Source: Bispira polyomma (Eukaryota). Taken from it: 64,000 bases of DNA. The stretch spans positions 2,480,001 to 2,544,000 of the forward strand of contig OZ287756.1 in NCBI GenBank assembly GCA_965649765.1. The letters are read 5' to 3'. The notes below the pieces were generated by a model, which worked only from the letters and a program-made list of their open reading frames with translations, was not told the DNA's origin and searched no databases. Position numbers and translations under genes: made by a program. Of this stretch, positions 3,352-60,668 are shown one piece after another (the stretch's first letter is position 1; each line of letters begins with the position of its first letter).

Positions 3352-3490
3352 CCCATTTTGTTTGATGAGTAGTTCCAGATATCTCCATAGTAACTGTGCA
3401 GACTCCCTGTCAATCATCCCCACACAACTGCCCAGCTCTCGGATCTTATTCTGACAAAACCTCAGGACGTCGTTTTTGTGGGTTTCTCCC
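3352..3490 (-). CDS. SEC16: SEC16 coding exon 14
   Basis: TTTTAAG|GGGAGA...AATGGG|GTAAGA; GETHKNDVLRFCQNK...IDRESAQLLWRYLELLIKQNG (Sec16 'THK.DV..F...S..LLW..L.LL..QNG'). Confidence 0.95.
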
Positions 3491-4499
3491 CTTAAAAAAA
3501 ACAAGACACAAATGATGGGATCCACAACCTCCTGTACAAAGTTTATAGAAATCCTTCATCTCAGAATCTTAACAGTTGACATCATTTAGAGTGAAACGAC
3601 TCGTATTTGTTATACTGTACAAAACAAAAACTTTAGCTGGAAGAAAATTTCACTAATTTATATTATTTGAGAAGTTCACTGGAATAAATTTTTACTATTG
3701 GCTATTTTTTTTAAATAAAATACAATAGGTTTAAATCTTCATCACTGACTCACACATACATAAACACACAACAAACCTCTTAATGGGAGGCCCAGGAAAC
3801 AGCTTTAGTTCCTCCTGATATAACTCCTCGCACACACACACAGACATACATACAGGTTTATGGTGTAGATCGAGGACGTAGGTTTTTTCCTACCCAAATG
3901 AGGACATCTTTATTTGCAAGTTTTTCCACCATATTTCAGTGGTAATGCATCAAATAAATTGATTTCATGCTATTATTAATCTAAAATTTTAAGTAATACT
4001 TGTAGGTAAAATACAGGAATTTTACAAGACAACTGAGGACATTTATATCAGCACTTAGTAGCAATTTTGGTATTCAACAGAGGACACACGTGTACAAGAA
4101 CTGTAATATATTATAGAGGACACACATTTGAGGTATTATCTATCAAACTGAGGGCATAGTATGGCCTAAGATATAATTACCACAAATAGTTAACTGAATC
4201 TTTTTTAACACCTCAACTTAGTTCTGGTTAAAAGACTGACGTATGGTCAATCATAGCCTTGCTTTAATTTACTTAGGATATAATAAATCGGTCGTAATTT
4301 TCTTGTACTTTTGGCATACTAAGCAAGCATCAAACAATACTTAAAGTACATTTCCATCAGTTGTGCTCCTATCTAGAACTGTTCTATTAATACCCTGGCC
4401 TATATACAGAGAAGACAGAAATAGAAAACAAACAATATAGAAAGGGATACACATTGAAATATGAAATGCCCGTTGCAGGCATATAGTGTAGATATTTAA

Positions 4500-4960
4500 T
4501 ATCTAAAAGAGGACACTTAGATATACATGTATATTCAATGGAAGACTCACAGTTTATCAGATTAATTGTATCCAATAGAGGACACAGTTTATCAGATATA
4601 TGGTATCCAATAGAGGACACACAGTTTATCAGATATATAATACCAGATGGAGGACACACAGTATAATATCAAATTGAGGACACACAGTTTACCAGATATA
4701 TGGTATCAAATAGAGGACACACAGTTCGTCAGAAATATGGTATCAAATAGGGGACACACAGTTTAATATCAAATAGAGGACACACAGTTTACCAGATCTA
4801 TGATACCAGATAGGGGACACACAGTATAATATCAAATAGAGGACACACAGTTTACCAGATCTATGATATCAAACAGAGGGCACACAGTTTATCAGATATA
4901 TAATATTAGATAGAGGACACAGTTTCTCATATATATATAATATAAAATAGAGAACACAAA
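4500..4960. repeat. Degenerate minisatellite, core AATAGAGGACACACAGTTTA(T/C)CAGATAT
   Basis: More than ten recognisable GAGGACAC-centred units of ~27-38 bp. Confidence 0.85.
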
Positions 4961-6419
4961 CCTGAGGTAAATATTATCCTAAAGAGGATGATGTTTCTAA
5001 GTCTTAAAGTGGTAGGATAAAGTAAACATTTAACTATCAGGGTAAGTAGCCTTACAGAAATCTGTAGCTTGTATTCCCTTGAATACATACAATTTGCTGT
5101 TTGACTGAATTAGTTCAAAGTCCAGTCGTAGGTTGATGAGAATAACAGCGAAGGAGGGAGGACACCAATAGTTGTTGTGATGTAACCAAAGTTTAATGAA
5201 GAGATTTGTGCAGTTTAGTACAGTCAAGGTCTAGCTGAAGGTCAAGGGATGGAGAGAAAGAGGGAACATGGCAATAGTGATTGTGAAATGAGAAACAGAT
5301 TTAAGTAGTGTAGGCAACGGAATACCGGTATCCATTTTCCATTTTCATTTTCCATATTTTCATCAGTATCGGCCAAATTCAAACAAATTAATAGCCATTC
5401 GGTTCAAACTACATGTTTACACAATATCATTTTCTAACACCTATTTAGGCATTGTAGGTGTGTTAGTATCATATGACACTTTGCACCAACTATCTTACTT
5501 CGAATATCTGATTTTTTAAACAGGAAGTGAATTATTTTACTATGTGTATTACCGTAGCACCTAAAATTACACCTACTGAGGTATGGTTTAAGATGAAATC
5601 TTTTTATGATGTGAGCTATGACATAATTTATGACGTAAATCCCTTATTACAGTTTTCAATTAAACTATGGCTGGTAAGAAAATATTTTATGGTTTTATGA
5701 TGGTTCACCGTATTTTCGACCTATTAAACGAGTAAATAATCCTTGCAGTTTTGTAGGCCATTTTAGTATTTAAGTTACGATATGAAGTGACCTTGTATAT
5801 TTTTATAGATTTTTTTTTGTTGAAATGCAAGTTATTTTTAAAAATGACTCTGATTCTTTATTTTTGGTAAAAACGAACTGAAAATATGAATATTGACCAT
5901 ATATTATTTCGCCGGCAGAAATGTATTATTCAAATAAAAAGTGGTCAGTAAAATAAATAACTTTATTTATCGACCGAGGGTAAAATACATTCACATTTAT
6001 TTTACTAACATCTGTTGTCATAATAGCTTCATCATATTAAAAAATGGATCGAAACGTCTGGTAGGTTGAGCGTCAGATATACATTTTATTGCACAAGTAA
6101 GTCACATACTTACACACAAGACACGTTTTGAATTTTGTAAATTGGAGAAATATTAAGCAAGTTATGATGGTTTAAAGTATAATACATTTGCAAAGTAGTG
6201 GACCAATCATAAATGCAAAAGTCAAAGTAAGTCCAAGAAGTGCGAGGTATAGTAAGAACCGGTACTTGGTTCTATTTGGGGGTCTTGCCTTATTTATTTA
6301 ATGAATTTTCATAAATTCCTAACAAAGACGATATAAAAATTGAGAGACTTTATTAACAGTAAAAGTATTTGGTATCCTTGCATTACCCGTTTCTGACTGA
6401 GTAAGGCATTTTACCACAT

Positions 6420-7845
6420 TATATGACATTAACATTTGTATATTTGAAAAAAAAAACAATACTAAGAGGAACAATACTAATTAGTAATTACTCGTGTCAA
6501 TATAGTAATAAAAGATATAATTAAGTTCATTATGCAAATCTAAATGATCCATGCTGTTATTAATTTATGTGTACAAAGTTAATTTTAATCATACATGTTA
6601 TGCTTGTTATCTTTCTACCAAACTATAAACTGATTGTAAAACTCTGTAAACCCTGTTTTTCTAGCACATTGTAGTTGATAATACTGGAATCGGTGTATTA
6701 GTACTGGTTTTAAGTTTTTAGGTTTAATTGTAACTAAATATAGATCAATTGCCAATTTTATTCAATAAAGACTTCGAAGGATTGATTGAAACGAAGATTT
6801 ACGGTCTGTGAGATCCCTTTTAGAACCATACTATAGGATATAGTATGTATTGTAGTTGTCTGTATAGAGAATGTAACAAATAGAATTGCTAAATTGATTA
6901 TCATTTGCTATATTTATGTCCTCTATTGTATTCTAAATATCACAGCTGTGTGTCCTCTGTTGGGTATTATGTATCTCAGCCATATAGAAGTAATAGAAAA
7001 GTAATAGATTTGCTGAAATTTCAAAGTAATAGATTTCAAAATTTAAAATGTAATAGTAATAGACTGCAAAGTAGTAGATTTTATCTATTACCTTTCTATT
7101 ACTTTTATTGTTTTATCATGGAACATATTCTTTTAGGTACTCACATTGTTACACTGTATGATAAATTAAATATTGCAAGATTTCCACTCACAACACAGAA
7201 TTGAAGGATATATATTTAAATGAATCCATTCAACAAGCTCATTGACACAGGACATTTGATAAATTTTTATTCCCCTTTTAAAAATTATTTCATGTTAAAA
7301 GCCCATAATCATCTATTCAGATTTTTTACACTTAAAATGATTTTTAAACTTTTTATTTCGTATTTTAGAAAACACTTTTTAAAGAATTATTGCACATGAA
7401 ACTTTTTTCTTTTTTGGGCCCCCATTTATTAATGCACTCATTCATTAATGTAAGCTTTTCAAAATATGTCCATTGTCTTGTGAGAATTACCTACTTGAGT
7501 AACATTAACAAAAGCTGCAGAATTACAAAATCTTGCAAGTTTTGTCATCAAATGTGGAATACATTTATGAAGCTGTGTGTTTGCAAAGGCTAACATAGAG
7601 AGGCTGGAGAGAAAAAGAATCTGTAGGGAAACAGTTCATAGTAGTGAGGTCATCATTAGCTTATTTTATTGCGATAAATACACCTTACCTTACCCTCACA
7701 GTGTGCTTAATCCTATTTTTGAATTAACCGTTCAAACCATAGAATAAATAGCCCTTTTTTTAAAAGACTTTTCTTGTACCAACTGACAATGTGCACTGCG
7801 AATGCACGGAAGTAACTTCCTTCCGGTTACAGCATGGCATAGTAC
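6420..7845. repeat. Left arm of ~1.4-kb inverted repeat (pairs with 11563-13012)
   Basis: Reverse-complement match along its length, e.g. the same spurious peptide in ORFs 6905..7204(+) and 12232..12426(-). Confidence 0.95.
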
Positions 7846-10800
7846 TGCTGTTGTTATCTACAGAAGATCCATCACCTCTTTGCTTTGATATGACTGAACA
7901 ACAATGTTCATACAGTGATGTCCCAGTAAAACTCATTCTTTGTATGCCTAACTAGCCTCTACACTGTCTGAGTTTTGCAGTCCAGTGGGTTCTCTAAAGG
8001 AAGACCTTTGCTTCAGTGGTAGAGGATCAGCCCTCGACTGCCGTAGACCCTCTACAGGCCTTTGACGTTCTGAAGTTGCGAGTGGGCTAGGCCCCAGATA
8101 GTTCTCAACTTACTTAGCTCCAGTTTTGAAGGTGGGAGATAGATGTGCAGAATTCTGAAGACTCCTGCTGTTTTTACCTGCACATGATCAATCACCTCCC
8201 TGCTGTGGTGTGACTGAGGAGTAAAACTCAGCATTTGTATGCCTAGTAGCCTCTACAATGTCTGAAGTTTGCAGCATAGTCCTATGAACAAGAGAGCCAG
8301 GCTTCCCGAGTGGTTAACTGTCTTATCTTTTGCCCTACACAGAGATGACCATGTAAAAGTGTTTGAGTTGGCAGACTACCCTTCCTTTCTAAGGTGAGGA
8401 CAGGGCTGGACCATTGGTGTGTCCTTACTTACAGTTTCCATCCCATGAGCAAGAGTTTGTGGAGTTTGTCAGAATTGTAGATCGTGGGGAGATATCAGGC
8501 CTGATTTTATTTTTCTCTTACAAGTCAGGACGAACACAACACCCAGGTTACCAGAGAAGGCAGAAGTTCAGACTATGAGGTTGATTCTTCTTACTGCAGT
8601 TTTACCTTCATCTGACCCTTTGCAGACTCTTTTACAGAGAATGGAGCTTTATCGTGACCGGGGATCCCATATCAAGAAATTTTTAAAAAGAATGGAGCTT
8701 TATCGTGACAGGGGATCCAATATCAAGAAATTTGCAAAGTATTAAGTTATTGCCAGGAGATTAAACAGAGATTCTCTTATCTCAGACACAGACCCATGAC
8801 TTCGTCAACCTTCAAGAGATGCAGTTTTGAAAACTGTAAATCACCTTGTATTACTGAAAGGGCCATGTTTTTGACAGTAAAATAGCTCACACACAGTATT
8901 CTGACTTATCACAGTCTTCTCAGCAGAGATCCCTACTGAGAGACTGATACGTATTTGCAGTTGGCCATTTCAGCATTGCTTGAGAAGTAGTGACTGTTAG
9001 ATGGTGTTTGGTGCTTTTCGGAGTTATACGTATGATGAGATGGGCTCTTCGTCTCGAGAGCTCTCAGCATACACAACAGTTTCAGAGAGGTCTCAGCGTT
9101 TCCATGGTTTCAAGTTTGGTTATAAACAAGGCAAGCTCTCGTAGCAGTGTGAGATTTGGGGAGAGTTATCAGCATTTTCACAGGCCGGAAATGAAGGTAC
9201 ATGCTGTCCAAGTTTACCACGTTGAGATGAGGTGGAGATATGTGGATTTTACAGTGTTTCTAGCTGAAATAGGTATATTTGGGGCGTTAGACATCTCATA
9301 TTCTTGTAAATTCAAAGATTCGTCAGATTCGTATTGAGGAACCATCAGTCTATGGGGAGTTGTATGTGGCGGAAGCTGTTTGGTCACCTTTCATATCCTT
9401 ATTGGTTAGTATTCGCCCAGATTTGTCACAGATTCGCTATGCGGAACATGTGGCTACTAATGACAGCCTACAAGCCCCTGTTAGTCGACTGTCTGGTTGA
9501 TTGAGTCTACATCGCTATAACAGAGTCAAATTCAGATTTATTAAATGAGTTTAATTCAACAGTTCAAAGACTGGGCTGATTGATAAACCTTTAAAAATCA
9601 GAGCTTTAGCCCACTCGATGACAGGTTTTTGCTGCTACCACTTTACTTTGAATCCAGAAGTGGTAGTTTTTGTCGAAGGCGTTTCTAGCGGTCAAGTTAG
9701 TCCAGTGTAACACCCACAATGTTTATATTCTTCATACAAGAAAACAGTGCTATTTGTAAGGTTACTTTTAAAAACCCTTCCAATGGTATCTAAAATCTCA
9801 TTGCCAGTACCCTAGTCACTGGTAATCCAAATACCTGTAACTGCTCAGATAAGGTACCATCTTCCATGGTTTCCAGCCGATTTGACAGCCAGTGGTGTAT
9901 GGTCAGGTTTAGACACAAGTTTTTCTATAAATATCCTCAAGTTGTAGGCAGTCCTACTGGCACTCGAGGCATTTGGCAGTCAGATACTGGGAAATGAGTT
10001 TCTCCTAGCCCCCGACAGTGTAACAGCAGTAGCTCATTTGAATAAACAACAGGAACTCATTCTTTGGAGATGTGTCTCCTGGTATGGTGGATACTTACCT
10101 ATTACAATCCCAGGAAGATCTGGTTTCGAGCCTGTCTCGTAGAGAGTTGAATCTCAGATGTCTAGTAGCAATCCTTCCAAAGCTGGTTTAGAAATTGCTA
10201 ACTTACCAGTGTAGAATGATGGTCTTAGCTCCGGGATGGCCAGGCATGACCTGGTTGTGGGATCTGGTGGACTTATCGATCAGACCAGCAGTTTTCATAC
10301 CCAGTGGCTTTATTGGCTCAAGAAACTGTTTGGCCACAGTTATCTACAGAATGTTCTATATCTGTATCTCAATGTTTGGGTACTAGAATACAATTGCAAC
10401 GGATTCTCAGTACTCAAGATTAGTGAAGGATCGAAATAAGGCACTTCAGAGAATATCCTCTAGACAAGTGTATGAATCACGGTGGGCCTTACTGTTCTTT
10501 CAACAGAGAAATCTCAAATCCTCAACTATGGCTAGTTCTTCAAAACTTTTTGCAGATCACTTGTGATTGAAAAGACTAGAACTTCTGGCAAGTCTTGAAC
10601 TGAATAGAGTTCTGGACAGTTTTATAGACAAACCTGTGATTGGTAGAGGTTTTCCTTCTTGAGACTTGTCATTGGTACTTTTAGCTTTGACCAAGCCTTC
10701 ATTTGAACCTATGAAAGAGGCTTCCTTGAAACCGGTTTTCTTCAAAACCTTATTACTTATGGCCTCAGGGAAGAGAAGAGATGAACTTCATGCATGGACC

Positions 10801-11640
10801 TTCTCTTCTCGCAACTTTAAACCACATTGGAATAAGGCTATTGTATCTCTCTCCTGTGTTTTGGTTTAGAACCAGTTGACTTCTCTAAGTCTAGAGTTTT
10901 TCACCTTGTATCCTCTGAGCTCTCTGAGATCCTATCTCAAGTGCCCCAAGGATAGGAAAGCCTGCTTTCCATTTGCCTACAGGGGAAGCTTTAGCAAAGA
11001 TATATAAATAATTACTTTTTCATCTTGGCTAAAACAGACAATCTTAGATTAGAATGCAGACACTGTGATTGAGAACCTTTGCCAGGTTAAGGCACATTTG
11101 AGGTTCTCTTTACTCACAAAAATAACATTACTGGGGTCGAGACATCTTTTTGTATAGAGTTTACTGCCATGATCCTGTGTTTGTGCATGTACAGTTTTAT
11201 CTTCACCTTATGCTGATGACTCATGTGTGTTGTCTCTTCTTTGCAGGCCTCCTGATATGTTGCGTCCTGCTTGATAAGGTAGAACCATCATTAAGAAAGG
11301 TCACACTGCAGGGTTTGATTACTCCATCTACTTGTCTGGCTTTGCTACCTGCACATCCTGTACAGTTTCACATGTTTGATAGACTGAATTACAAGTTTTG
11401 AGTAAGATACACCCTAGCTGCTATCTTTTAATCTTAACTGTGTGTTTTTAGTTTTCATGAATTAATGTAATTCTTACGACTTTAACTCAGTTCTGTCTAC
11501 TACTTCACTTTATTATTAGTCTGGTGTAAACTTGGGCTTTAAGCTCCATTAAGTTTGCCACCAGTTACCATGCCACACTGTAATAAGAAGGAAGCTACTT
11601 CCGCGTATGCTCAGTGCAGATTGTCGGTTGGGACAAGAAA
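7770..11640 (+). mobile_element. Decayed DIRS1-like tyrosine-recombinase retrotransposon
   Basis: RNase H remnant at ~9890-10070 (GVWS...SINILKL*AVLLALEAF...DSVTAVAHLNKQ); YR remnant at 10660-10870 (DLSLVLLALTKPSFEPM...KTLLLMASGKRRDELHAW); many stops and frameshifts; inverted termini. Confidence 0.8.
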
Positions 11641-13012
11641 CGTCTTTTAAAAAAGGGCTATTTATTCTTTAGTTTGAGCGGTTAATTCAAAAATAGAACT
11701 AAGCACACTGTGAGGATAAGGTAAGGTGTATTTATCACAATAAAATAAGCTAATGGTGACCTCACTACTATAAACTGTTTCCCTACAGATTCTTTTTCTC
11801 TCCAGCCTCTCTATGTTAGCCTTTGCAAACACACAGCTTCATAAATGTATTCCACATTTGATGACAAAACATGCAAGATTTTGTAATTCTGCAGCTTTTG
11901 TTAATGTTACTCAAGTAGGTAATTCTCACAAGACAATAGACATATTTTGAAAAGCTTACATTAATGAAAGGCCTACATTAATGAATTGGCTCCCAAAAAA
12001 GACAAAAGTTTATGTATCATTATATCATTATCATATAAATAAACAATAATTCTTTAAAAAGTGTTTTCTAAAATACGAAATAAAAAGTTTAAAAATCATT
12101 TTAAGTGTAAAAAATCTGAATAGATGATTATGGGCTTTTAACATGGAATAATTTTAAAAAGGGGAATAAAAATATATCAAATATCCCATGTCAATAAGCT
12201 TGTTCAATGGATTCATTTAAATATATATTCTTCAATTCTGTGTTGTGAGGGGAAATCTTGCAATATTTAATTTATCATACAGTGTAACAATGCGAGTGCC
12301 CAAAAGAATATGTTCCATAATAAAACAATAAAAGTAATAGAAAGGTAATAGATAAAATCTACTACTTTGCAGTCTATTACTATTACATTTTAAATTTTGA
12401 AATGTATTACTTTGAAATTTCAGCAAATCTATTACTTTTCTATTACTTCTATATGGCTGAGATACATAATACCCAACAGAGGCACACAGCTGTGATATTT
12501 AGAATACAATAGAGGACATAAATATAGCAAATGATAATCAATTTAGCAATTCTATTTGTTACATTCTCTATACAGACAACTACAATACATACTATATCCT
12601 ATAGTATGGTTCTAAAAGGGATCTCACAGACCGTAAATCTTCATTTCAATCAATCTTTCAAAGTCTTTCTTGAATAAAAATGGCAATTGATCTATATTTA
12701 GTTACAATTAAACCGAAAAACTTAAAACCAGTACTAATACACCGATTCCACTATTATCAACTACAATGTGCTAGAAAAACAGAGTTTACAGAGTTTTACA
12801 ATCAGTTTATAGTTTGGTAGAAAGATAACAAGCATAACATGTATGATTAAAATTAACTTTGTACACATAAATTAATAACAGCATGGATCATCTAGCTTTG
12901 CATAATGAACTTAATTATATCTTTTATTACTATATTGACACAAGTAATTACTAATTAGTATTGTTCTTCTTAGTATTGTTTTTCTTCAAATATACAAATG
13001 TTAATGTCATAT
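11563..13012. repeat. Right arm of ~1.4-kb inverted repeat
   Basis: Ends ...AATGTTAATGTCATAT, the reverse complement of ATATGACATTAACATT at 6421. Confidence 0.95.
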
Positions 13013-13289
13013 ATTGTTTCAATTGAAAAACCCCCCTTTAAAAATGTTGCATGTAAATAGGAACATCAAAACAATATGAATTCTACTATTTTGTGGAATT
13101 AATTAAAAAGTAAATTTAACTCCACCAAGTTAGATTGTGGGCACATTGCATGTTTTTATTTGACCAAATGGGGACACGTGTGTTGGTATTTCCTATACAA
13201 GAGAGGACATGGTGTGTGAGGTATGTCCTCAGTTAGAAGGTGTGCAACCATGCCCATGTCCTCAGTTTGAATGCGTAAACAAGCACAGA

Positions 13290-13810
13290 CCCACACAGAC
13301 TAACAAACCACTCATTTAATGAAAGGCCCAGGAAACAGCTTTAGTTCCTCCTGATGTAACTCCTCGCACACACACACAGACAGACCCACACAGACTAACA
13401 AACCACTCATTTAATGAGAGGCCCAGGAAACAACTTTAGTTCCTCCTGATGTAACTCCTCACACACACACACACACACAAACAACAAACCACTCACTTAA
13501 TCAGAGGCCCAGGAAACAGCTTTAGGTCCTCCAGATGTAAATCTTTACACACAGACACACACAAACAACAAACCACTCACTTAATCAGAGTCCCAGGAAA
13601 CAGCTTTAGGTCCTCCAGATGTAAATCTTCACACACAGACACACACACACACCCAGACAACAAACCACTCACTTAATCAGAGGCCCTGGGAATAGCTATC
13701 AGTTGGATGTAACTCCTCACACACACAGACAGACACACATACAGCAAACCACTCACTTAATCAGAGGCCCAGGGAATAGCTTCAGTTCCTCCAGATGTAA
13801 CTCCTCACAC
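13290..13810 (-). repeat. Tandem copies of SEC16 exon-13 3' end plus donor (five intronic copies here, a sixth at 3770-3845)
   Basis: Unit of ~85-95 bp made of ~55 nt of exon (EELHxEELKLFPGPLIK), GTGAGTGGTTTG and a (TG)n spacer. Confidence 0.95.
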
Positions 13811-13961
13811 ACCCCACTAGCCTCTGTGATCTCCACCGTGGCCGGCTGACCGTCCTGTGGCCGATTGGCCAGCACCTTGACCATGTGACCGTTGGGGGCA
13901 AAGCTGGCTCTGACGTGGGGGATGGTGTGTTTGTGGGGGGTACGCCGGGCCGGCTCGGGCT
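13757..13961 (-). CDS. SEC16: SEC16 coding exon 13, start of conserved central domain
   Basis: CACTTTCAG|AGCCC...ATTAA|GTGAGT; translates EPEPARRTPHKHTIPHVRASFAPNGHMVKVLANRPQDGQPATVEI...EELKLFPGPLIK, matching the Sec16 'PHV.A.F.P.G...P..GQPA.VE...FPGPL' signature. Confidence 0.95.
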
Positions 13962-21025: not shown

Positions 21026-24000
21026 AGTCTACACCCACACAGGGTCAGTGAATGAGGTCTACACCCACACAGGGTCAGTGAATGAGGTCTACACCCACAC
21101 AGGGTCAGTGAATGAGGTCTACACCCACACAGGGTCAGTGAATGAGGTCTACACCCACACAGGGTCAGTGAATGAGGTCTACACCCACACAGGGTCAGTG
21201 AATGAGGTCTACACCCACACAGGGTCAGTGAATGAGGTCTACACCCACACAGGGTCAGTGAATGAGGTCTACACCCACACAGGGTCAGTGAATGAGGTCT
21301 ACACCCACACAGGGTCAGTGAATGAGGTCTACACCCACACAGGGTCAGTGAATGAGGTCTACACCCACACAGGGTCAGTGAAATGAGGTCTACACCCACA
21401 CAGGGTCAGTGAATGAGGTCTACACCCACACAGGGTCAGTGAATGAGGTCTACACCCACACAGGGTCAGTGAATGAGGTCTACACCCACACAGGGTCAGT
21501 GAATGAGGTCTACACCCACACAGGGTCAGTGAATGAGGTCTACACCCACACAGGGTCAGTGAATGAGGTCTACACCCACACAGGGTCAGTGAATGAGGTC
21601 TACACCCACACAGGGTCAGTGAAATGAGGTCTACACCCACACAGGGTCAGTGAATGAGGTCTACACCCACACAGGGTCAGTGAAATGAGGTCTACACCCA
21701 CACAGGGTCAGTGAAATGAGGTCTACACCCACACAGGGTCAGTGAAATGAGGTCTACACCCACACAGGGTCAGTGAATGAGGTCTACACCCACACAGGGT
21801 CAGTGAATGAGGTTTACACCCACACAGGGTCAGTGAATGAGGTTTACACCCACACAGGGTCAGTGAATGAGGTCTACACCCACACAAGGTCAGTGAATGA
21901 GGTCTACACCCACACAGGGTCAGTGAAATGAGGTCTACACCCACACAGGGTCAGTGAATGAGGTCTACACCCACACAAGGTCAGTGAATGAGGTCTACAC
22001 CCACACAGGGTCAGTGAATGAGGTCTACACCCACACAGGGTCAGTGAATGAGGTTTACACCCACACAGGGTCAGTGAATGAGGTCTACACCCACACAGGG
22101 TCAGTGAATGAGGTTTACACCCACACAGGGTCAGTGAATGAGGTTTACACCCACACAGGGTCAGTGAATGAGGTCTACACCCACACAGGGTCAGTGAAAT
22201 GAGGTTTACACCCACACAGGGTCAGTGAAATGAGGTTTACACCCACACAGGGTCAGTGAATGAGGTCTACACCCACACAGGGTCAGTGAAATGAGGTCTA
22301 CACCCACACAGGGTCAGTGAATGAGGTCTACACCCACATAGGGTCAGTGAATGAGGTCTACACCCACACAGGGTCAGTGAATGAGGTTTACACCCACACA
22401 GGGTCAGTGAATGAGGTCTACACCCACACAAGGTCAGTGAATGAGGTCTACACCCACACAAGGTCAGTGAATGAGGTCTACACCCACACAAGGTCAGTGA
22501 ATGAGGTCTACACCCACACAGGGTCAGTGAATGAGGTCTACACCCACACAGGGTCAGTGAATGAGGTCTACACCCACACAGGGTCAGTGAATGAGGTCTA
22601 CACCCACACAGGGTCAGTGAATGAGGTTTACACCCACACAGGGTCAGTGAATGAGGTCTACACCCACACAAGGTCAGTGAATGAGGTCTACACCCACACA
22701 AGGTCAGTGAATGAGGTCTACACCCACACAGGGTCAGTGAATGAGGTCTACACCCACACAGGGTCAGTGAATGAGGTTTACACCCACACAGGGTCAGTGA
22801 ATGAGGTCTACACCCACACAGGGTCAGTGAATGAGGTTTACACCCACACAGGGTCAGTGAATGAGGTCTACACCCACACAGGGTCAGTGAATGAGGTTTA
22901 CACCCACACAGGGTCAGTGAATGAGGTTTACACCCACACAGGGTCAGTGAATGAGGTTTACACCCACACAGGGTCAGTGAATGAGGTCTACACCCACACA
23001 GGGTCAGTGAAATGAGGTTTACACCCACACAGGGTCAGTGAATGAGGTCTACACCCACACAGGGTCAGTGAATGAGGTCTACACCCACACAGGGTCAGTG
23101 AATGAGGTTTACACCCACACAGGGTCAGTGAATGAGGTTTACACCCACACAGGGTCAGTGAAATGAGGTCTACACCCACACAGGGTCAGTGAAATGAGGT
23201 CTACACCCACACAGGGTCAGTGAAATGAGGTCTACACCCACACAGGGTCAGTGAAATGAGGTCTACACCCACACAGGGTCAGTGAATGAGGTCTACACCC
23301 ACACAGGGTCAGTGAAATGAGGTCTACACCCACACAGGGTCAGTGAATGAGGTCTACACCCACATAGGGTCAGTGAAATGAGGTCTACACCCACACAGGG
23401 TCAGTGAATGAGGTCTACACCCACACAGGGTCAGTGAATGAGGTCTACACCCACACAGGGTCAGTGAATGAGGTCTACACCCACACAGGGTCAGTGAAAT
23501 GAGGTCTACACCCACACAGGGTCAGTGAATGAGGTCTACACCCACACAGGGTCAGTGAATGAGGTCTACACCCACACAGGGTCAGTGAAATGAGGTCTAC
23601 ACCCACACAGGGTCAGTGAATGAGGTCTACACCCACACAGGGTCAGTGAAATGAGGTCTACACCCACACAGGGTCAGTGAATGAGGTCTACACCCACACA
23701 GGGTCAGTGAAATGAGGTCTACACCCACACAGGGTCAGTGAAATGAGGTCTACACCCACACAGGGTCAGTGAATGAGGTCTACACCCACATAGGGTCAGT
23801 GAAATGAGGTCTACACCCACACAGGGTCAGTGAATGAGGTCTACACCCACACAGGGTCAGTGAATGAGGTCTACACCCACACAGGGTCAGTGAATGAGGT
23901 CTACACCCACACAGGGTCAGTGAAATGAGGTCTACACCCACACAGGGTCAGTGAATGAGGTCTACACCCACACAGGGTCAGTGAATGAGGTCTACACCCA

Positions 24001-24600
24001 CACAGGGTCAGTGAAATGAGGTCTACACCCACACAGGGTCAGTGAATGAGGTCTACACCCACACAGGGTCAGTGAATGAGGCCTACACCCACACAGGGTC
24101 AGTGAAATGAGGTCTACACCCACACAGGGTCAGTGAATGAGGTCTACACCCACACAGGGTCAGTGAAATGAGGTCTACACCCACACAGGGTCAGTGAATG
24201 AGGTCTACACCCACACAGGGTCAGTGAATGAGGTCTACACCCACACAGGGTCAGTGAAATGAGGTCTACACCCACACAGGGTCAGTGAATGAGGTCTACA
24301 CCCACACAGGGTCAGTGAAATGAGGTCTACACCCACACAGGGTCAGTGAATGAGGTCTACACCCACACAGGGTCAGTGAAATGAGGTCTACACCCACACA
24401 GGGTCAGTGAAATGAGGTCTACACCCACACAGGGTCAGTGAATGAGGTCTACACCCACACAGGGTCAGTGAAATGAGGTCTACACCCACACAGGGTCAGT
24501 GAATGAGGTCTACACCCACACAGGGTCAGTGAATGAGGTCTACACCCACACAGGGTCAGTGAATGAGGTCTACACCCACACAGGGTCAGTGAATGAGGTT
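21026..24600. repeat. 30-bp minisatellite GTCTACACCCACACAGGGTCAGTGAATGAG, ~118 copies
   Basis: Direct tandem repeat with 31-bp (+A) and single-base variants; no spacers. Confidence 0.99.
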
Positions 24601-28604: not shown

Positions 28605-31223
28605 CTGTGAGTCTGTCCTCTGACTGTTGTACTGATTCTGTGTCGCTGAACTCTGTACACCATTACTACCACCAGTCTGTCCACCACTTTGCTTGTCCAC
28701 ATTGTACTCTTCTATCAGGGAGTCGTGTGACTCGTTCCTCCTGTGCTGTGATGACTCTGGGGCAGTAAAAGCTGATGCATTACTAGACTGAACTGGATGC
28801 ATTTCCCTGGTCACTTCCTGTGAGCTTGTGGATACAACATCTGACGTAGAATTATTCTGTACGGTTGGGTTAGCGGTCATTCTGGCGGTAATTGGTACTG
28901 AATCACCCACCTGGTGACTGGACCCTGTGGGTTGTTGACTGGGGTAATGGTTACTACTTGTATCCTGCTGACTAAAGGCCCCAGGCGGGGGTTGTTGCTG
29001 TGGCTGTTGAGGGTACTGAGCTGAGCTAGGGTTTAGTATGTCCCCCCTTTGCTCCCCCTCCTGACTTGGCTGTGACAAAACTCCCGATGATTCTTGTCTT
29101 AATGGATTTGGTGGAACAGCGGTATGCATCGGAGGCACCTGGCTAGCAATCTGATTGGCTGATCCCTGCAACTGACCAGGAAGCTGATTAGTTGATCTCT
29201 GCAACTGACTAAGAGGCTGATTGGCTGACACTTGCATCTGACCAGGAAGCTGATTGGCTGATCCCTGCAACTGACCAGGAAGCTGATTGGCTGATCCCTG
29301 CAACTGACCAGGAAGCTGATTGGCTGATCCCTGCAACTGACCAGGAAGTTGATTGGCTGACACTTGCATCTGGCCGGGTAATTGATTGGTTGATCCTTGT
29401 ATTTGATCAAGTACTTGACCCACTGACCCGTTCACCTGGACAGGTAACTGACTGACTGACCCTTGCATTTGACCAGTTATCTGATTTACTGATGCCTGTG
29501 CTTGACCAGGTAACTGACTGACTGACCCTTGCATTTGACCTTGGAACTGACCGATAGACCCTTGCAATTGACCGGGTAAATGATCTGCGGACCCTTGCAC
29601 TTGACCTACTGACCCTTGCACTTGACCAGGTAATTGACCCACTGGCTCTTGCACTTGACCTATTGACTCCTGCAATTGTCCCGTTGAGTGTTGTACCTGT
29701 GTTTGTCCTGTCATTCTAGCCTGTCCCTGATCTGTAGCTCCTTGTGACTGATGTAGTAGTTCAGTGTTGCTATGAGTGTGCTGTGACACAGACCCCATGT
29801 CCCCACCAGATACCGCCTGATAGCCGCCACTAGGAGCAGACTGCTGTACATGCTGTGTAGACTGTACTGAGACCACCGACCCTTGACTAGAATCAGCCCC
29901 AGACCACTGACTAGCTACCGTGTGGTCCAGCGATGACTGGCGGTCAATACTGACGTGTCCAGTGTTGGTCAGGGAGTGTTGTGAGGAGACTGAGGACTGG
30001 GGAGAGATCTGAGGGGAAGTCACATGACCTCTGTGTGCCGGGGGATTTGTTGTCTGTGGGGCACTAGTAGCGGTGATGTGGTGGGTCTGTAGGGGTGGGT
30101 GTGGCACTGGTGTGTTGTTAGCAGTAACAGTAGAAGGCTGTGTGTGGGTAGTATGGAGTACAGCGTCACTGTGTACAGTGTCTGTTGCGCTGCCTTGAAC
30201 CAGCCCTGATGACCCCAATGCACTCTGTGACCCTAGACCGGGGTTGCTATGGTGAACGTCTGTAGCTCCTGTCGGTAGTGTGTCTTCTCTTGGAACTAGG
30301 CCCGGAGTGTAGGCGGAGGAAGGGTCAGTGAGTGCAGTTCTAGGATATAATGGAGCACTCTCTGTGACTAGTCCAGTAGGGTGACCTTGTGTTCCTGTAT
30401 GTTGTTGTAGGTTTGGCTGTATGTCTGGCTGGCTCAGAGGTACAATACCGGGCATGGTCCTGCCTTCCTGGCCCTGCACAATGCTTTGTGCGGCACCCGG
30501 GTGGTGCTGGAATGTATCGCCCAAACTTCCAGGGCCCTGGTGGGCAGCCGGGAGTGCAGATTGTCCGGGAACTGGAGCCAACTGAATCCCCCCGACCACA
30601 CCGTTACCTTCAGGGGTTTCCCACAAGGTCAACGGAGGAGAAAACGTCCCCTGCTTGTTCTCGCTCTGCTTCTGTTGTTGGTAAAATGCTGATGTCTTGA
30701 ACTCCTCGGGAGTCTGCATATTAGGTGTTGGTTCAGGCTCCTGCAGTCCTCTGTTATCACCCACATCGGTATGACTTGCAAAACCTTGTCCCCTATTATC
30801 ACCCACATTGGCATGACTTGCAAAATCAAGTCCCCTATTATCACTCATATCACTTACATTTGCATGACTTGCCAAATCTTGTCCCCTATTACTCACATCA
30901 GAATGACTTGCAAAAGCTTGTCCCATATTGTCACTTGTGTCTCGCTGACCCGGTTTACTGATCTGTAAGGAAGCCAAGACACCGGGTGCGTTAACATGTG
31001 ACTGGCTAACCCCCTCCTCTCTCTCGGTAGGGGGTTTAAACAGCCCCTGGGGGTGGGGCACGATGGGAGAGGCGTATATGTCCAAGTTATGGCTCTGATC
31101 AGTACTGGCTGACGGTTGAGCATCCTCAGGTGTAACTATAGAGTAGGCAGAGGGAGGGGATGCTGTATCCTGGCTTGTTATTGGAGCGTCACTAGGAGCA
31201 GATGGATTGATCTCTGTGTGTGC
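28605..31223 (-). CDS. SEC16: SEC16 coding exon 5 (2619 nt, low complexity, internal coding repeats)
   Basis: 888-aa ORF trimmed by acceptor ATCTCCAG| and donor CAG|GTAAGA; phase 0-0. Confidence 0.9.
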
Positions 31224-34880: not shown

Positions 34881-36260
34881 ATTGTAATTGTAATTAGACT
34901 TTTATTGCGCTTAATCTCCTCTTAACAAAGGGGACTCTAAGGCGCACCAGCACAAAAGACAGTTATCCAATTTCCAAAATCAAGGGACAGAAAAAGGGTC
35001 AGCAACATAGAGCGCGCCGGGGGATGATTGAGACTAAGGTGGATATGCTTTAGTGTACAAGTGGGTTTTAAGCTTCTTTCTAAAACAGGCTAGAGAGGGG
35101 GAAGCACGAATCACATCAGGAAGATCATTCCAAACAATGGGAGCATCAAAAGCAAAGCTGTGACCAAACTGTTTAACCGACTTTTGAGTAGACGGGTGGA
35201 ACTTTGGAACAACAAGGAAATTGCTACCACTCTGACTACGTCTGGTATTGTAGGAACTACTGTAAGTGGAAAGATATGGGGCAAAATACTTTGGAAACCC
35301 AGTGTGGAGAAACTTATAAACAAGTATAGCTGTCTTAAACACTGAACGCTGTTCAACAGGGAGCCAATGCAATTACTTAAGAACAGGAGTTATACTAGTG
35401 TATCGACTGGTGTTTGACACAATTCTAGCTGCACTATTTTGAATGCATTATAATTTGCGTAAATTAAACTTTGAGAGACTCCTGAAAAGTGAATTGCAGT
35501 AATCCAGTCGACAAAAGCATTGGCCACAAGTATAGAAGCATCATAAGTGAGAAACCGTCTGACACGTCTAAAGTCACGGAGTTGCATAAAACAGCTTTTG
35601 CAGACACTCTGAACGTGTTTAGAGGAAGCAAAGTCAGAGTCAAACCATACACCCAGGTTCTTGACAGAATCAGCTGGACTGAAAGGGCTACCCAGGATGT
35701 CAACTGGAAACAATGCTTTCAACTTATCCCTCTGTTGTTTTGAGCCAAAGATTATGAACTCAGTCTTGTCGAGATTAAGTTTGAGTTTACCAGCTGACAT
35801 CCACTCTTTCACATCGTCAAGGCACCTGTTCAATTGTTCAAAGGCAGTAGATGTGTTTTTATGGGATAGGTGCACATAAATTTGGGTATCATCTGCATAA
35901 AAATGAAACTTTATTCCTGTGTATTTGCCAATAACCAATCTGAGAGGGGCAGTGTATAATGAGAACAACAGAGGGCCCAAAACAGAACCTTGAGGGACAC
36001 CAAACAAGAGTTTACAAAGATTGGACAGAGTAGAGCCAATTTTTATCGACTGATAACGATCAGTTAAGTAGGAAGTGAACCATTTAAGAACAGAGCCCGT
36101 AACTCCAAACCAAGTCTGAAGACAACTGAGAAGCGTGGAATGATCAATGGTGTCAAAGGCAGCAGAGAGGTCGAGCAATACCAGGGCAGTAGGTTCCCCT
36201 CTTGACAAAGATAGGTGAACTTCATTTTTTATAGACAGAAGAGCTGTCTCAGTAAAATGA
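34881..36260 (-). mobile_element. L2-clade LINE, same family, 5'-truncated RT copy
   Basis: ORFs 35390..36208 and 35034..35372 nearly identical to the 57954-60517 copy; same tail. Confidence 0.93.
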
Positions 36261-51574: not shown

Positions 51575-53086
51575 TTATGGCGAACAATGTTGAGATGGAA
51601 TCCTAAGTTTCTGCCTCCGAAAGTCCACAATTTCATGAATGCCATCAGCATATTTCTGTATCAACCCTTTATATTTAGTTGCTGATTCAGCCGATACATT
51701 AAAGTGCAAGTCCTGTAGATTTAAAACTGACTCTTTCTTGGATCTGAGCCATATATTGACTTGGTCTATGTCTATGGTATTGGGAACTGCACCTCTGTTA
51801 GCCAGATTCTTGTTCTGACTTGGTGTTGTTAGAACAGAGCATGATTCTGTTTGGGATATTTTTACGGATTGTGGCACGTCTGGATGGTACAGAAACATGT
51901 GTTCCCTTACATTAGAGAATGTCTGTAGAAAACACCTCATGGCTGCCTTAACATGAAGGCCACAATGGTAGGTCAGGTTGTTGTCCTGATTTCTACACAT
52001 AAATGATGGTAATATTAAAGTACGATTGAGTAGAGTTGATAAAACCATTGCATTTGTGAGAGTCAGTTTTTCAACAGTCCAAACAGTGGGCCATGCCAAT
52101 TGGCGTGGGTAGGTGTTTTGATACGTTACATACTTTGCTGTGGGGTTTGAATACTGGCCATTTCTGTCATAACTCCACATACCAGACTCTTTAAAGGTGA
52201 AGGTCTTGGATTCCAGGCCTTTCATACATGTCAAATGAGCAAATACCTTGTCTTTGTTTGCCACATAAAATATACCAGTTGGAGGTTTCCACCGCTCACA
52301 AGAAGTTAGAATGTGTTTCCTGGGGATTTTTACCACTTTTACTTCTCTAATCAGATTGTCGTAGGAATCCTTATCTTTTAGAATATTATTTAACAATAAC
52401 TGATCATTCCGCGGTCTGTTCTTACACTGCTGACCCATTTGCTTTAACAATGCCATTGTTTCAAGAGACTGCTTATAGAACACAAAGCCACCATTAACAC
52501 CTTTGCCCTCTTCGATCCCTGCTAAATGCCACGGCTGATCATCCGTTGGCCGTAGATCATTTGGGTGTTTGAAAAGTACTATATCAGCATCAACAAGGTG
52601 CACACTGTAGCCCAAGTACAAGAGGTCATATATGAGGAGAATCCTCAATGTCAATTTCTGATTATAGACCTGGGAACCTAAATCTGAGATGTTCTGCCCA
52701 ATGTCATAGTCAAAATACACCAAACACTCCACACCTTCATTAATATACATATCACAGGTACTCGGGGAATATGCCACAACAAGAAAGTTTTTGACACCTA
52801 TTTTCTGCATCGACGAGTACATATTCATAGTCATGTCAAAAAACGCTTGGTCACTTGATGTAATAGTGATCCAATGATCCGGAGAAGCTATCCGCGAAAC
52901 TCGGTCATCGAGTTCAGCAAGACTCATTTTTGTCAGGTGTTGATGTTGTAGCCATTTTGTGCTGCTGAAATCAAGAGGTGGATCATATGATGCATATGGT
53001 TTAGTCACAACAGCAGAGTCTGTACTTTTTTGCTTAGTTAATGTCACATCAGCCTTAACCTGACTGTGCTTTTGTACATCCCTCTC
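51575..53086 (-). CDS. Nucleotide-diphospho-sugar transferase (GT77/PF03407-like) glycosyltransferase, large terminal exon
   Basis: Acceptor TTTATTTTCAG|GAG; motifs LLYLGYSVHLVDADIVLFKHP (DxD), VNGGFVFYK, NDQLLLNNIL, and C-terminal AMVLSTLLNRTLILPSFMC. 503 aa here, 546 aa with exon 1. Confidence 0.85.
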   Translation of the reverse strand, partial: ERDVQKHSQVKADVTLTKQKSTDSAVVTKPYASYDPPLDFSSTKWLQHQHLTKMSLAELDDRVSRIASPDHWITITSSDQAFFDMTMNMYSSMQKIGVKNFLVVAYSPSTCDMYINEGVECLVYFDYDIGQNISDLGSQVYNQKLTLRILLIYDLLYLGYSVHLVDADIVLFKHPNDLRPTDDQPWHLAGIEEGKGVNGGFVFYKQSLETMALLKQMGQQCKNRPRNDQLLLNNILKDKDSYDNLIREVKVVKIPRKHILTSCERWKPPTGIFYVANKDKVFAHLTCMKGLESKTFTFKESGMWSYDRNGQYSNPTAKYVTYQNTYPRQLAWPTVWTVEKLTLTNAMVLSTLLNRTLILPSFMCRNQDNNLTYHCGLHVKAAMRCFLQTFSNVREHMFLYHPDVPQSVKISQTESCSVLTTPSQNKNLANRGAVPNTIDIDQVNIWLRSKKESVLNLQDLHFNVSAESATKYKGLIQKYADGIHEIVDFRRQKLRIPSQHCSP

Positions 53087-54543
53087 CTGAAAATAAAGAA
53101 AACCTAAAATGTTATAGGATACCAAGTATTCTTAAAAACTTTAACATCTACCAACTGGATGGGCAAGAGAAAGTATAAAAGTTTAACGATACAACATCAA
53201 TGCATCATATAGTGCAAAGACTGGTTACAAACTATACAATTACAACTTATGTTAGGAATTTTATGGCACTGATAATGCGGATAATCAGTAGAGTGGTTAC
53301 AGCTTGTGCAAATTGTATTTTGTTTATTATGTTAATTATATTTGAATATTTATTGATTCTTTTATGCCCTGAGATTACTGGTTTAGTTATCACTAGTTAT
53401 TTTAGCGATTTATTTTTCTCTCCAAAATTATTGACTTATGCCAGTGGATCAATATCTCAACAGAGCTGTTGGTTTGACCATGTTACTATAACTTTTGAAG
53501 AAATCAATACATAAACAGTTTATCTAATCTGTTATTTACACTCGATCCAAGGTCAGTCTGGGGAAAATATAAAAGAGATAAAATCATTTAGCAGGATTAA
53601 TTTTAATGTTGTGAACATCACAGTATACTTAATTTTCCTTTTGTGGTTGGGTAGAAATAAAACCAAGCATATATTTAAAATAACTATTTATTAATGTATT
53701 CTCAAAACCTATTTATTAATTTGGATATTTAAAGATGTATAAAACATACATATTTAAATGATATCTTAAATATTTGTAATATAATTTGAGCATTTTAAAT
53801 AAAACAACATTTGTAAATTGAATACAAACAATATGGATATATTTTTTGGGATATTTATTATAAAGCTTTGCAACATACATACCCATCCACACTCAGGAAA
53901 GGTTACATGATTCAGTGTAAAACATTCCAACCAAGAAAATACATAGTGGCATGTGTATTTTACAGGTTTTACCTTTCTACTGATCAGATGGATTATTTGT
54001 AAATGGATCTGCCATATTTATTTCTCAAAGTTAAGCCCTTGGCTAAGTTAAAGAACGGTCTTAAATTCTTTGTGAAAATCGCTAAGCCTCAGACAAAAGT
54101 CTAAGCCATTTTTTCCGAAAAGTTTAGGCAAAAGTCTTAACTTTAGACCTTTTGTAAATATGGCCCCACGTCTAATCTTTAGCGGTGTCAATTTTCTTCC
54201 TTATGATTAATCTTTGAGAAAATAAACAATTATCCTGGAGCCTTATTCACCAATATTCTTTGAATGCAGTTGCAGTTCTTTTTCTTGGTCTCAGCAGTCC
54301 CTTGAGAATATACGCAATTTTGTATTGTCATGTGTAAACTTAGGCATATATGACGTCACTGTGTGGTAGACTCACAGTAAAGTATAAGATTTGTAATGTA
54401 TATTAAGATTGGAAAATATTATTGATAGTGTGAGCCTTTTGCATTTTACCTTCTGGTTGAAATATATTACGTTATAGGTTTTGTCCAAAAGTGCAACTAA
54501 TATTTTTTTTTCAAATACTTATGTGTTATTTTGTCCATAAGTG

Positions 54544-57784: not shown

Positions 57785-60668
57785 TAGCCCTCCTTTTCCC
57801 TTTATCTTTGGGCTCCTTTTCCATTGACTTTGCCCCACTTTTCCCATGACTTTGCCTCCTTTTCCTATGACTTTGCCCTCCTTTTCCTGTGACTTTGACC
57901 TCCTTTTCCTATGACTTTGACCTCCTTTTCCCTTGATTTTGCCCTCCTTTCCCTTTCCATGTTGATGCACTAGTTGGTGACGGTCATAAGTTTATGACCT
58001 TTCTTGATTCATGCGATTTAAAACAGTCAGTTAGACAACCTACCCATCTGCATGGTCACATTCTGGACCTTATTTTATCTCCTTGTGATCAGGATGCTAT
58101 TGTAGATGTCAAAGTCTGTGATTTCATATCGGATCATGCATTGGTCAAACGCCCAATTGCTTCTCCCCCACAGGTGGCTCATATTCCTAATACAGTGCAT
58201 TATAGGAGGTACCACTGTATTAACATGTCTGACCTCCGTACTGATCTTGAGAGTACTTCCTTTATTAAGTCACCTGCTAATTCTGTAGCCAAACTTTATG
58301 AACAATACATACATGACTTGGGTGATGTACTAGATAAGCATGCACCACTTGTATCAAGAATGTCAAAGAAAGATTCTGTGCATTGGCTCTCTGATTCATA
58401 CCGACGGGCAAAATCTCTCAGGCGCCAATATGAAAGAACTTGGCGAAGGGCCAAGAATCCATTAAATAGAAGTCGACTTCGTCGCCAGTTTGGTTGGTGC
58501 AATGTATTTGTTAATGAGGATAAGTCGGTGTATTATGGCAAACTTATCTCTGACAACAGTCACAACTCCAGGAAGCTGTGGCACGAACTACGCAAGACCC
58601 TTAATATGGATACCAAGGTGGCACTCCCGTCCCATGATTCTGATAAATCACTAGCTGATAAGTTTGCTTCCTTTTTTTCGGACAAAATTAAGAGAATTAG
58701 AGATACTTTTGTTGTTTCTGGAACTAAAATTGATGTTCATCCTCTTTCTGATCCCCCAGAAATTACTGCCTTTACCAGAGTCTCTGAAGATGATGTTAGT
58801 AAAATAATAAGTAACTCGCCTACAAAATCCTGCATGTTGCACCATGGCCAACATCTCTTATTAAAGAATGTAGTGATATATTACTACCATCCATTAGAAA
58901 GCTTGTAAACTGCTCACTTACGGATGGACATATACCTGATGGTTTTAAAACAGCTGTGGTTACTCCTCTTATTAAGAAGGCTTCTCTTCCAGTTAATGAC
59001 CTGAAGAATTATCGTCCTGTATCTGGTCTTAGTTTCATATCAAAACTGGTTAAACGTGTGGTTGCTAGGCAACTGTTGGATCACATCTTTGTCCACGACT
59101 TAGACAACCCATACCAGTCTGCGTATAAAACAGGTCATTCGACTGAGACAGCTCTTCTGTCTATAAAAAATGAAGTTCACCTATCTTTGTCAAGAGGGGA
59201 ACCTACTGCCCTGGTATTGCTCGACCTCTCTGCTGCCTTTGACACCATTGATCATTCCACGCTTCTCAGTTGTCTTCAGACTTGGTTTGGAGTTAGGGGC
59301 TCTCTTCTTAAATGGTTCACTTCCTACTTAACTGATCGTTATCAGTCGATAAAAATTGGCTCTACTTTGTCCGATCTTTGTAAACGCTTGTTTGGTGTTC
59401 CTCAAGGTTCTGTTTTGGGCCCTCTGTTGTTCTCATTATACACTGCCCTCTCAGATTGGTTATTGGCAAATACATAGGAATTAAGTTTCATTTTTATGCA
59501 GATGATACCCAAATTTATGTGCACCTATCCCATAAAAACACATCTACTGCCTTTGAACAGTTGAACAGGTGTCTTGACGATGTGAAAGAGTGGATGTCAA
59601 CTGGTAAACTCAAATTTAATCCCGACAAGATTGAGTTCATAATCTTTGGCTCAGAACAACAGTGGGATAAGTTGAAAGCATTGTTTCCAGTTGACATCCT
59701 GGGTAGCCCTTTCAGTCCAGCTGATTCTGTCAAGAACCTGGGTGTATGGTTTGACTCTGACTTTTCTTTCTCTAAACACGTTCAGAGTGTCTGCAAAAGC
59801 TGTTTTATGCAACTCCGTGACTTTAGATGTGTCAGACGGTTTCTCACTTATGATGCTTCTATACTTGTGGCCAATGCCTTTGTCAGTAGTAGACTGGATT
59901 ACTGCAATTCACTTTTCAGGAGTCTCTCAAAGTTTAATTTACGCAAATTACAATGCATTCAAAATAGTGCAGCTAGAATTGTGTCAAACACCAGTCGATA
60001 CACTAGTATAACTCCTGGTCTTAAGAAATTGCATTGACTCCCTGTTGAACAGCGTTCAGTGTTTAAGACAGCTACACTTGTTTATAAGTTTCTCCACACT
60101 GGGTTTCCAAAGTAGTTTGCCCCATATCTTTCCACTTACAGTAGTTCCTACAATACCAGACGTAGTCAGAGTGGTAGTAATTTCCTTGTTGTTCCGAAGT
60201 TCCACCCATCTACTCAAAAGTCGGTTAAACAGTTTGGTCACAGCTTTGCTTTTGATATTTGTTGTTTGGAATGCACTTCCTGATGTGATTCATGCTTCCC
60301 CCTCACTAGCTTGTTTTAGAAAGCAGCTTAAAACCCACTTGTACACTAAAGCATACCCACCTTTGTCTCAATCATCCCACGGTGTGCTCTATGGTGCTGA
60401 CCCTTTTCTGTCCCTTGATTTTGAAAATTGGATAACTGTCTTTTGTGCTGGTGCGCCTTAGAGTCCCCTTTGTTAAGGGGAGATTAAGCGCAATAAAAGT
60501 CTAATTACAATTACAATGACTTATGGACAAAATAATACATAAGTATTTGAAAAAAATATTAGTTGCACTTATATTACAATTACAATTCCCTTGATTTTGC
60601 CCTCCTTTTCCCATGACTTTGCCCTCCTTTTCCCATGACTTTGCCCTCCTTTTTCCTTGACTTTGCCT
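57785..60668. repeat. 21-bp pyrimidine-rich minisatellite (CCTTTTCCCATGACTTTGCCCT-like) split by the L2 insertion: 57785-57950 and 60587-60668
   Basis: Same unit on both sides of the LINE. Confidence 0.85.
57954..60517 (+). mobile_element. L2-clade LINE, 5'-truncated ORF2 (endonuclease end plus RT) with frameshifts and (TTACAA)n tail
   Basis: PTHLHGHILDLIL..SDH (APE endonuclease), NYRPVSGL, LLDLSAAFDT, GVPQGSVLGPLLF, YADDTQ, WNALP..LKTHL; AATAAAAGTCTAATTACAATTACAAT end. Confidence 0.93.

What the first reader, a model, noticed from the sequence alone, without database searches (positions are those of the whole stretch)
3770..13810. Exon-13 junction array is polarised and its old copies differ from the live exon mostly synonymously: an ordered record of past exon states
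Live exon end: CAT CTG GAG GAA CTG AAG CTA TTC CCT GGG CCT CTG ATT AA|GTGAGT. The nearest copy (~13667) shares CTA TTC...CTG ATT. The next two (~13575, ~13491) read CAT CTG..CTA AAG CTG TTT..CTG ATT. The three distal copies (~13405, ~13310, ~3778) read CAG GAG GAA CTA AAG (C/T)TG TTT CCT GGG CCT (CTC/TTC/CCC) ATT. In the ~13405 copy four of five altered codons are synonymous (CTG>CTA, CTA>TTG, TTC>TTT, CTG>CTC), which is not expected from neutral intronic decay. Proximal copies keep GTGAGT; distal ones have lost the GT (ATGAGT, GAGGT). Inference: new units were added next to the exon at several different times, each capturing the then-current coding sequence, so the array is chronologically ordered. 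The one shared amino-acid difference (Q for L) resembles my recollection of vertebrate SEC16A (QEEMRAFPGPL) and may be ancestral.
Basis: partly seen in the sequence, partly recalled or inferred. Interest (0 to 1): 0.85.

Follow-up and report, generated by a model that had tools for sequence, protein, structure and literature searches.

The report
Repeated exon end inside SEC16 intron
The last 56 bases of a SEC16 exon and its splice donor were copied six times into the next intron, a known kind of repeat ('mirage'), and at most three silent positions preserve an older state of the exon rather than a full ordered history.

Summary
The array is real: six copies of the SEC16 exon end (13812-13757, minus strand) with donor, five adjacent and one displaced to ~3780 by a 9.4-kb transposon. 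It is a 'mirage' exon-intron boundary repeat, described before in amphioxus and here seen in a probable lophotrochozoan; earlier scan notes report the same in other genes of this genome.

The 'ordered record' is only partly supported. Unit relationships follow array order and the nearest copy is the latest capture, but u2-u6 lie equally far from the exon (6-8 substitutions). u4/u5 share a dead donor, so they are copies of a copy. A two- or three-capture model beats four captures by about 4.8 log-likelihood units and fits well. Only one branch (3 synonymous, 0 non-synonymous) looks like exon history; the other changes are 5/14 synonymous, and the other echoes in this gene 7/24, both neutral. 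A spliced contig from a close relative has Leu, not Gln, and TGT, not TGC, so those distal states are probably not ancestral. Its letters at the three decisive sites were not displayed. Left unexplained: shared changes fall mostly on third codon positions (p 0.003-0.015, post hoc).

The parts
13757..13961 (-). Live SEC16 exon (205 nt, phase 1 to phase 2); its last 56 nt (13812-13757) are the repeated part; donor AA|GTGAGT, followed in frame by TGA
   Evidence: tblastn to Sec16 homologues; spliced contig of organism B joins this exon to the 15935-15754 exon and ends at this donor; single copy in the genome
13673..13724 (-). u1: latest capture from the exon; shares CTG, CTA, TTC with the live exon; 2 substitutions and 2 gaps; GT kept
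13581..13636 (-). u2: sister of u3 (shared GAA, GAT, GAC); GT kept
13497..13552 (-). u3: sister of u2; GT kept
13411..13466 (-). u4: CAG, CTC; dead donor ATGAGT shared with u5
13316..13371 (-). u5: mosaic, TGC like u6, dead donor and tail like u4 (out-of-register duplication inside the intron)
3853..13287 (.). Dispersed repeat (probable DNA transposon with nested material) inserted in the GT/CA spacer between u5 and u6; boundaries approximate
   Evidence: right end shared with L003 and L004, each followed by a CA tract; left end has five other genomic copies at 86-93%; internal 1.4-kb inverted arms 6416-7844 / 11566-13017
3780..3835 (-). u6: last unit, donor destroyed, continues into the original intron tail
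3749..3756 (-). TGTGTGAG in the intron tail behind u6, identical to exon 13811-13804: likely microhomology of the founding duplication
   Evidence: suggestive only, since the tail is GT-rich
3352..3490 (-). Next SEC16 exon (GETHKNDV...), in frame with the live donor

Best explanation
A 'mirage' minisatellite grown by local tandem duplication. A misalignment between TGTGTGAG in the exon and the same 8 bases about 30 nt into the intron duplicated the exon end plus donor (inferred). The first unit stays live because any downstream donor would include an in-frame TGA (shown by sequence). The founding copy then decayed neutrally and duplicated inside the intron, giving u2/u3 and u4-u6 (shown for u4/u5 by the shared dead donor; inferred for the rest); a transposon later pushed u6 away. 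A second, later duplication from the exon gave u1. New junction copies land next to the exon by geometry, which gives the polarity. Up to three synonymous sites (13783, 13777, 13774) may hold the exon's older letters; Gln, CTC, TGC and the two Glu>Asp changes are most simply mutations of the copies, inherited by their daughters.
For: Flat distance of u2-u6 from the exon. Poisson branch model: two captures lnL -20.0, three -20.1, four -24.8; bootstrap fit of the two-capture model p=0.83; the ladder stays lower (best -22.2) even with the exon rate raised 2-16 fold. Stems leading to u2/u3 and u4-u6 carry 2 synonymous and 3 non-synonymous changes, fitted as well by neutrality as by selection. Organism B matches the live exon in amino acid at the Leu/Gln codon (CTA) and shows no difference at 13793-13827. 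The other echoes in the gene are 7/24 synonymous. Distal copy most diverged also in the arrays at 28605, 2109 and 880. An independent exon-end copy with another breakpoint in relative L006. Literature on mirages: PMC3087553, PMC3902484.
Against: Shared changes are 8/9 third-position against 1/8 for private ones (Fisher p=0.003; 0.015 if TGC is counted as private; 0.03-0.09 without the E/u1 branch). L006 agrees with distal copies at TGC, TTT and CTC, though its four-fold sites are near saturation (12/28 identical) and it agrees with the live exon at the other two sites. The counts are tiny (17 substitutions in 51 nt); the four-capture ladder is disfavoured, not rejected outright (fit p=0.125). 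The model assumes copies mutate at the exon's synonymous rate.
Confidence: 0.68

Rival explanations
1. Chronological ladder: four or more separate captures, each freezing the then-current exon, so distal states including Gln are ancestral.
For: Tree order matches array order; third-position bias of shared changes; L006 has TGC, TTT, CTC.
Against: lnL about 4.8 lower than two or three captures; distal copies carry only 1-3 private substitutions although the exon would need five synonymous changes at about 15 sites in the same time; organism B has Leu and TGT; u4/u5 share a dead donor.
Confidence: 0.1
2. Exchange with a selective filter: unequal crossover or contraction repeatedly fuses copy sequence into the live exon end, or captures ends from diverged alleles, so subgroup stems were coding or weakly constrained and the array is a reservoir rather than a record.
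For: Shared changes are third-position and conservative (two Glu>Asp) while private ones are first or second position; mirage arrays are reported as length-unstable, even somatically (PMC3087553); u5 is a mosaic.
Against: The synonymous versus non-synonymous split of stems and tips is not significant (p=0.15-0.35); allele capture needs alleles more diverged than organism B (dS about 0.17-0.2), while runs X1-X3 show no difference over the exon; no such bias in the other echoes of the gene.
Confidence: 0.14
3. All copies neutral and the live exon unchanged: even the three synonymous differences arose in the founding copy by chance, so nothing ancestral is recorded.
For: Overall 8/17 synonymous is not significant against 29% (p=0.09); L006 has CTG and a third-position A like the live exon at two of the three sites; about nine echoes in this gene to pick from.
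Against: Three of three synonymous has probability 0.024 under neutrality; L006 has TTT like the copies.
Confidence: 0.07
4. Copies are used as alternative donors or mini-exons and so stay under coding selection.
For: u1-u3 keep GTGAGT; each unit has an AG near its start.
Against: Reading past the live donor meets TGA in frame; u1 is frameshifted; u4-u6 lost the GT; no pyrimidine tract before the AG; tips are mostly non-synonymous (6/9); mirages did not disturb splicing in amphioxus (PMC3087553). No RNA of this species was available.
Confidence: 0.01

Closest known systems
'Mirage' minisatellites of amphioxus (Adh3, globins BflGb6/BflGb9, troponin C, PGBD5; PMC3087553, PMC3902484; original report Canestro et al. 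2002, PMID 12087171, not readable here)
   Same: Tandem units spanning an exon-intron boundary, 81-100% alike, many but not all keeping the splice signal, subgroups of adjacent units from turnover inside the cluster, terminal unit most distinct; several per gene.
   Different: Host is a probable lophotrochozoan, not a cephalochordate; unit about 85-95 nt with a GT microsatellite spacer; array split by a transposon; those papers, in the passages read, do not discuss polarity or retained older codons.
Intron gain by tandem genomic duplication (Rogers model; internal gene duplication, as reviewed in PMC3087553 and listed)
   Same: Local duplication that includes a splice signal, leaving the mRNA unchanged.
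   Different: No new intron is made here; an existing intron is lengthened at its 5' end.
Polarised growth of tandem arrays such as CRISPR arrays and minisatellites (from my own knowledge, not checked here)
   Same: Newest unit nearest one fixed end.
   Different: No dedicated machinery is implied; polarity follows from duplicating a segment anchored in the exon, and most units arose from other units.

Membership tests
Mirage minisatellite | Tandem repeats whose unit spans an exon-intron boundary | tested here: met
   56 nt exon plus donor and about 30 nt intron, period 84-95
Mirage minisatellite | Many but not all units keep the GT/AG signal | tested here: met
   u1-u3 GTGAGT; u4-u6 lost it
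Mirage minisatellite | Turnover inside the cluster (adjacent units most alike) | tested here: met
   u2/u3 differ by 2, u4/u5 by 3 substitutions
Mirage minisatellite | Normal splicing unaffected | tested here: inconclusive
   No RNA run of this species; organism B's transcript uses the matching donor but its intron is unknown
Mirage minisatellite | Copy-number polymorphism or somatic instability | not testable with these tools
   Read laying skipped the repeat (13452-13497, 13625-13749) and only contigs were available
   7, 7, 6, 7, 8 substitutions for u2-u6; only u1 is closer
   Organism B has CTA (Leu) and no listed difference at 13793-13827 (relies on hidden rows lying within 40 nt of the ends, p=0.0003 for that pattern). 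Saturated L006 has TGC but Ala
   Organism B's letters at 13757-13791 were not displayed; L006 matches copies at TTT and CTC, the live exon at the other two
Intron gain by tandem duplication | A new intron formed from the duplicated segment | tested here: not met
   The same donor position exists in L006 and L007

The most novel reading that the evidence does not exclude
Intronic junction copies are not neutral: frequent contraction or exchange puts them into the live exon end, so they stay under weak coding constraint, or they were captured from successive or diverged functional states. Either way such arrays, which seem common in this genome, would be a within-genome source of ancestral or alternative coding alleles.
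Probability: 0.2. Interest if true: 0.65.

Novelty: new member of a known kind. Interest (0 to 1): 0.3.

Why it matters
The structure is known from amphioxus; finding it at 9 of 16 exons examined in this gene, in a relative, and by earlier notes in other genes of a probable lophotrochozoan widens its range and bears on how introns grow and how decoy splice donors are tolerated. If older copies often hold former synonymous states, a single genome could polarise recent coding substitutions without an outgroup. This array alone gives at most three such sites and cannot establish that.

Tried and rejected
Recovering organism B's full exon: not in the protein searches nor JGI metagenomes; read laying allows one call and hid the rows near the exon ends. 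The 30 kinase loci were mostly single long exons and gave no usable echoes. A paralogue as donor of the copies: rejected, the exon is single-copy. MAFFT's placement of u1 (8 substitutions) rejected in favour of the pairwise alignment with 2 substitutions and 2 gaps; the distances and tree overstate u1. CpG decay as cause of the three synonymous changes: none is in a CpG context. Vertebrate Gln as evidence: rejected. First likelihood script timed out. L005 is only a microsatellite match. The original mirage paper was not held.

Full report
Gene and setting. The window is C9:2480001-2544000 of a 1.035-Gb genome. The gene on the minus strand is SEC16 (Pfam TPR_Sec16 on the 2268-2109 exon; tblastn to homologues). 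Exon-by-exon scores are nearly tied among Lingula, molluscs and Owenia and lower for echinoderms and a hemichordate, so the host is probably a lophotrochozoan; I could not place it further, and no amphioxus sequence was among the named hits. The exon is 13961-13757; a spliced contig in run X4 (organism B, 15 differences in 213 nt) joins it to the upstream exon and stops matching at this donor. The exon is single-copy.

Observation. Five are adjacent; u6 lies 9.4 kb away behind a dispersed repeat that sits in the GT/CA spacer and whose ends recur elsewhere, the right end next to CA tracts. Behind u6 the intron contains TGTGTGAG (3756-3749), identical to the exon at the unit start (13811-13804), a plausible microhomology for the founding duplication (suggestive only). 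Reading past the live donor meets TGA in frame, so downstream donors cannot give a normal protein.

Unit relationships. Distinct substitutions in the 51 coding nt: three synonymous ones separate E and u1 from u2-u6; u2/u3 share GAA, GAT, GAC; u4-u6 share CAG and CTC; u5/u6 share TGC; eight are private. The tree follows array order, which any array growing by local duplication would give. Distance from the exon does not rise with position: 7, 7, 6, 7, 8 for u2-u6. u4 and u5 share a dead donor and tail, so their common ancestor was not a live exon end; u5 is a mosaic of u4 and u6 features, as an out-of-register duplication inside the intron would produce.

Is the synonymous excess special? Neutral expectation is 29% (14.75 of 51 sites, kappa 2). 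All changes: 8/17 (p=0.09). Without the E/u1 branch: 5/14 (p=0.38). The E/u1 branch alone: 3/3 (p=0.024). Nine of 16 exons examined have an echo above the shuffled maximum; after hand trimming to the duplicated exon part and correcting one frame, the others are 7/24 synonymous. The exon-end copy in relative L006 is 9/16, not above the two-lineage null (p=0.16).

Number of captures. The ladder fails because the distal copies have too few private changes for the exon history it requires. Two and three captures cannot be told apart. The data are small and the model is simple.

Outgroups. Organism B (6 synonymous differences at about 35 sites) has CTA, Leu, at the Leu/Gln codon and no listed difference at 13793-13827, so TGT and GAG GAG as in the live exon. 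This rests on the hidden rows lying within 40 nt of the piece ends; all 17 displayed rows lie outside those zones (p=0.0003). Five real differences are hidden, and they cover the decisive sites 13783, 13777, 13774 and 13762. L006 matches distal copies at TGC, TTT, CTC and the live exon at the other two sites, but is near saturation. The Leu/Gln position varies widely among homologues, so the vertebrate Gln says nothing.

What remains odd. Shared changes are third-position 8/9 against 1/8 for private ones (p=0.003; 0.015 with TGC counted as private; 0.03-0.09 without the E/u1 branch), and the two non-synonymous u2/u3 changes are both Glu>Asp. The synonymous versus non-synonymous version of the test is not significant (p=0.15-0.35). 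This is post hoc and in one array of about nine, but it keeps open constraint on, or repeated capture of, the copies.

Known kind. Tandem duplications of exon-intron boundaries are described in amphioxus as 'mirages', with unstable length, turnover inside clusters and no effect on splicing (PMC3087553; PMC3902484). My paper searches found no report for lophotrochozoans, which is weak evidence given the library's limits. Earlier notes of this scan report the same structures in other genes of this genome; I checked this only for SEC16.

Limits. No RNA of this species. The genome-wide test was not possible. The gene was searched exon by exon; the joined step was left out. Verdict: real, a new member of a known kind; polarity mostly geometric; a record of at most three silent sites, unproven.

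Noticed in passing
window 28636-28437, 15766-15627, 2130-1991, 25727-25449 (donors); 1096-769, 171-85 (acceptors); 32489-32457, 20592-20565 (inner exon pieces): Further exon echoes in SEC16; in the multi-copy ones the distal copy is the most diverged and changes look neutral.
   Followed up: partly
L006 581-652: A relative (84% amino-acid identity over the exon) has its own single, older copy of the same exon end, starting further upstream and without a GT spacer: independent duplication at the same junction.
   Followed up: partly
window 3853-13287: 9.4-kb dispersed repeat with short internal GAGGACAC-type repeats and 1.4-kb inverted arms (93%); its right end is followed by a CA tract here and in L003 and L004, suggesting insertion preference for CA microsatellites. 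No clear target-site duplication.
   Followed up: partly
window 21027-24599: Intronic 30-bp minisatellite, 118 copies, 97% alike.
   Followed up: no
window 13591: Run X1 reads G instead of T, which would remove u2's private change; may be polymorphism or cross-mapping from u3.
   Followed up: no
window 29135-29660 and 30746-30934: Coding tandem repeats (33 nt and 42-51 nt) inside the 2.6-kb SEC16 exon.
   Followed up: no
window 51575-53125; 34881-36260 and 59135-60517: A 516-aa ORF with Pfam Nucleotid_trans; two 96%-identical fragments of a reverse-transcriptase-like element in opposite orientation.
   Followed up: no
G000, e.g. C14:6520605, C2:29345988, C5:13929273: Many dispersed, intronless kinase ORFs of 411-418 aa with near-equal scores, possibly carried by a mobile element.
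   Followed up: no
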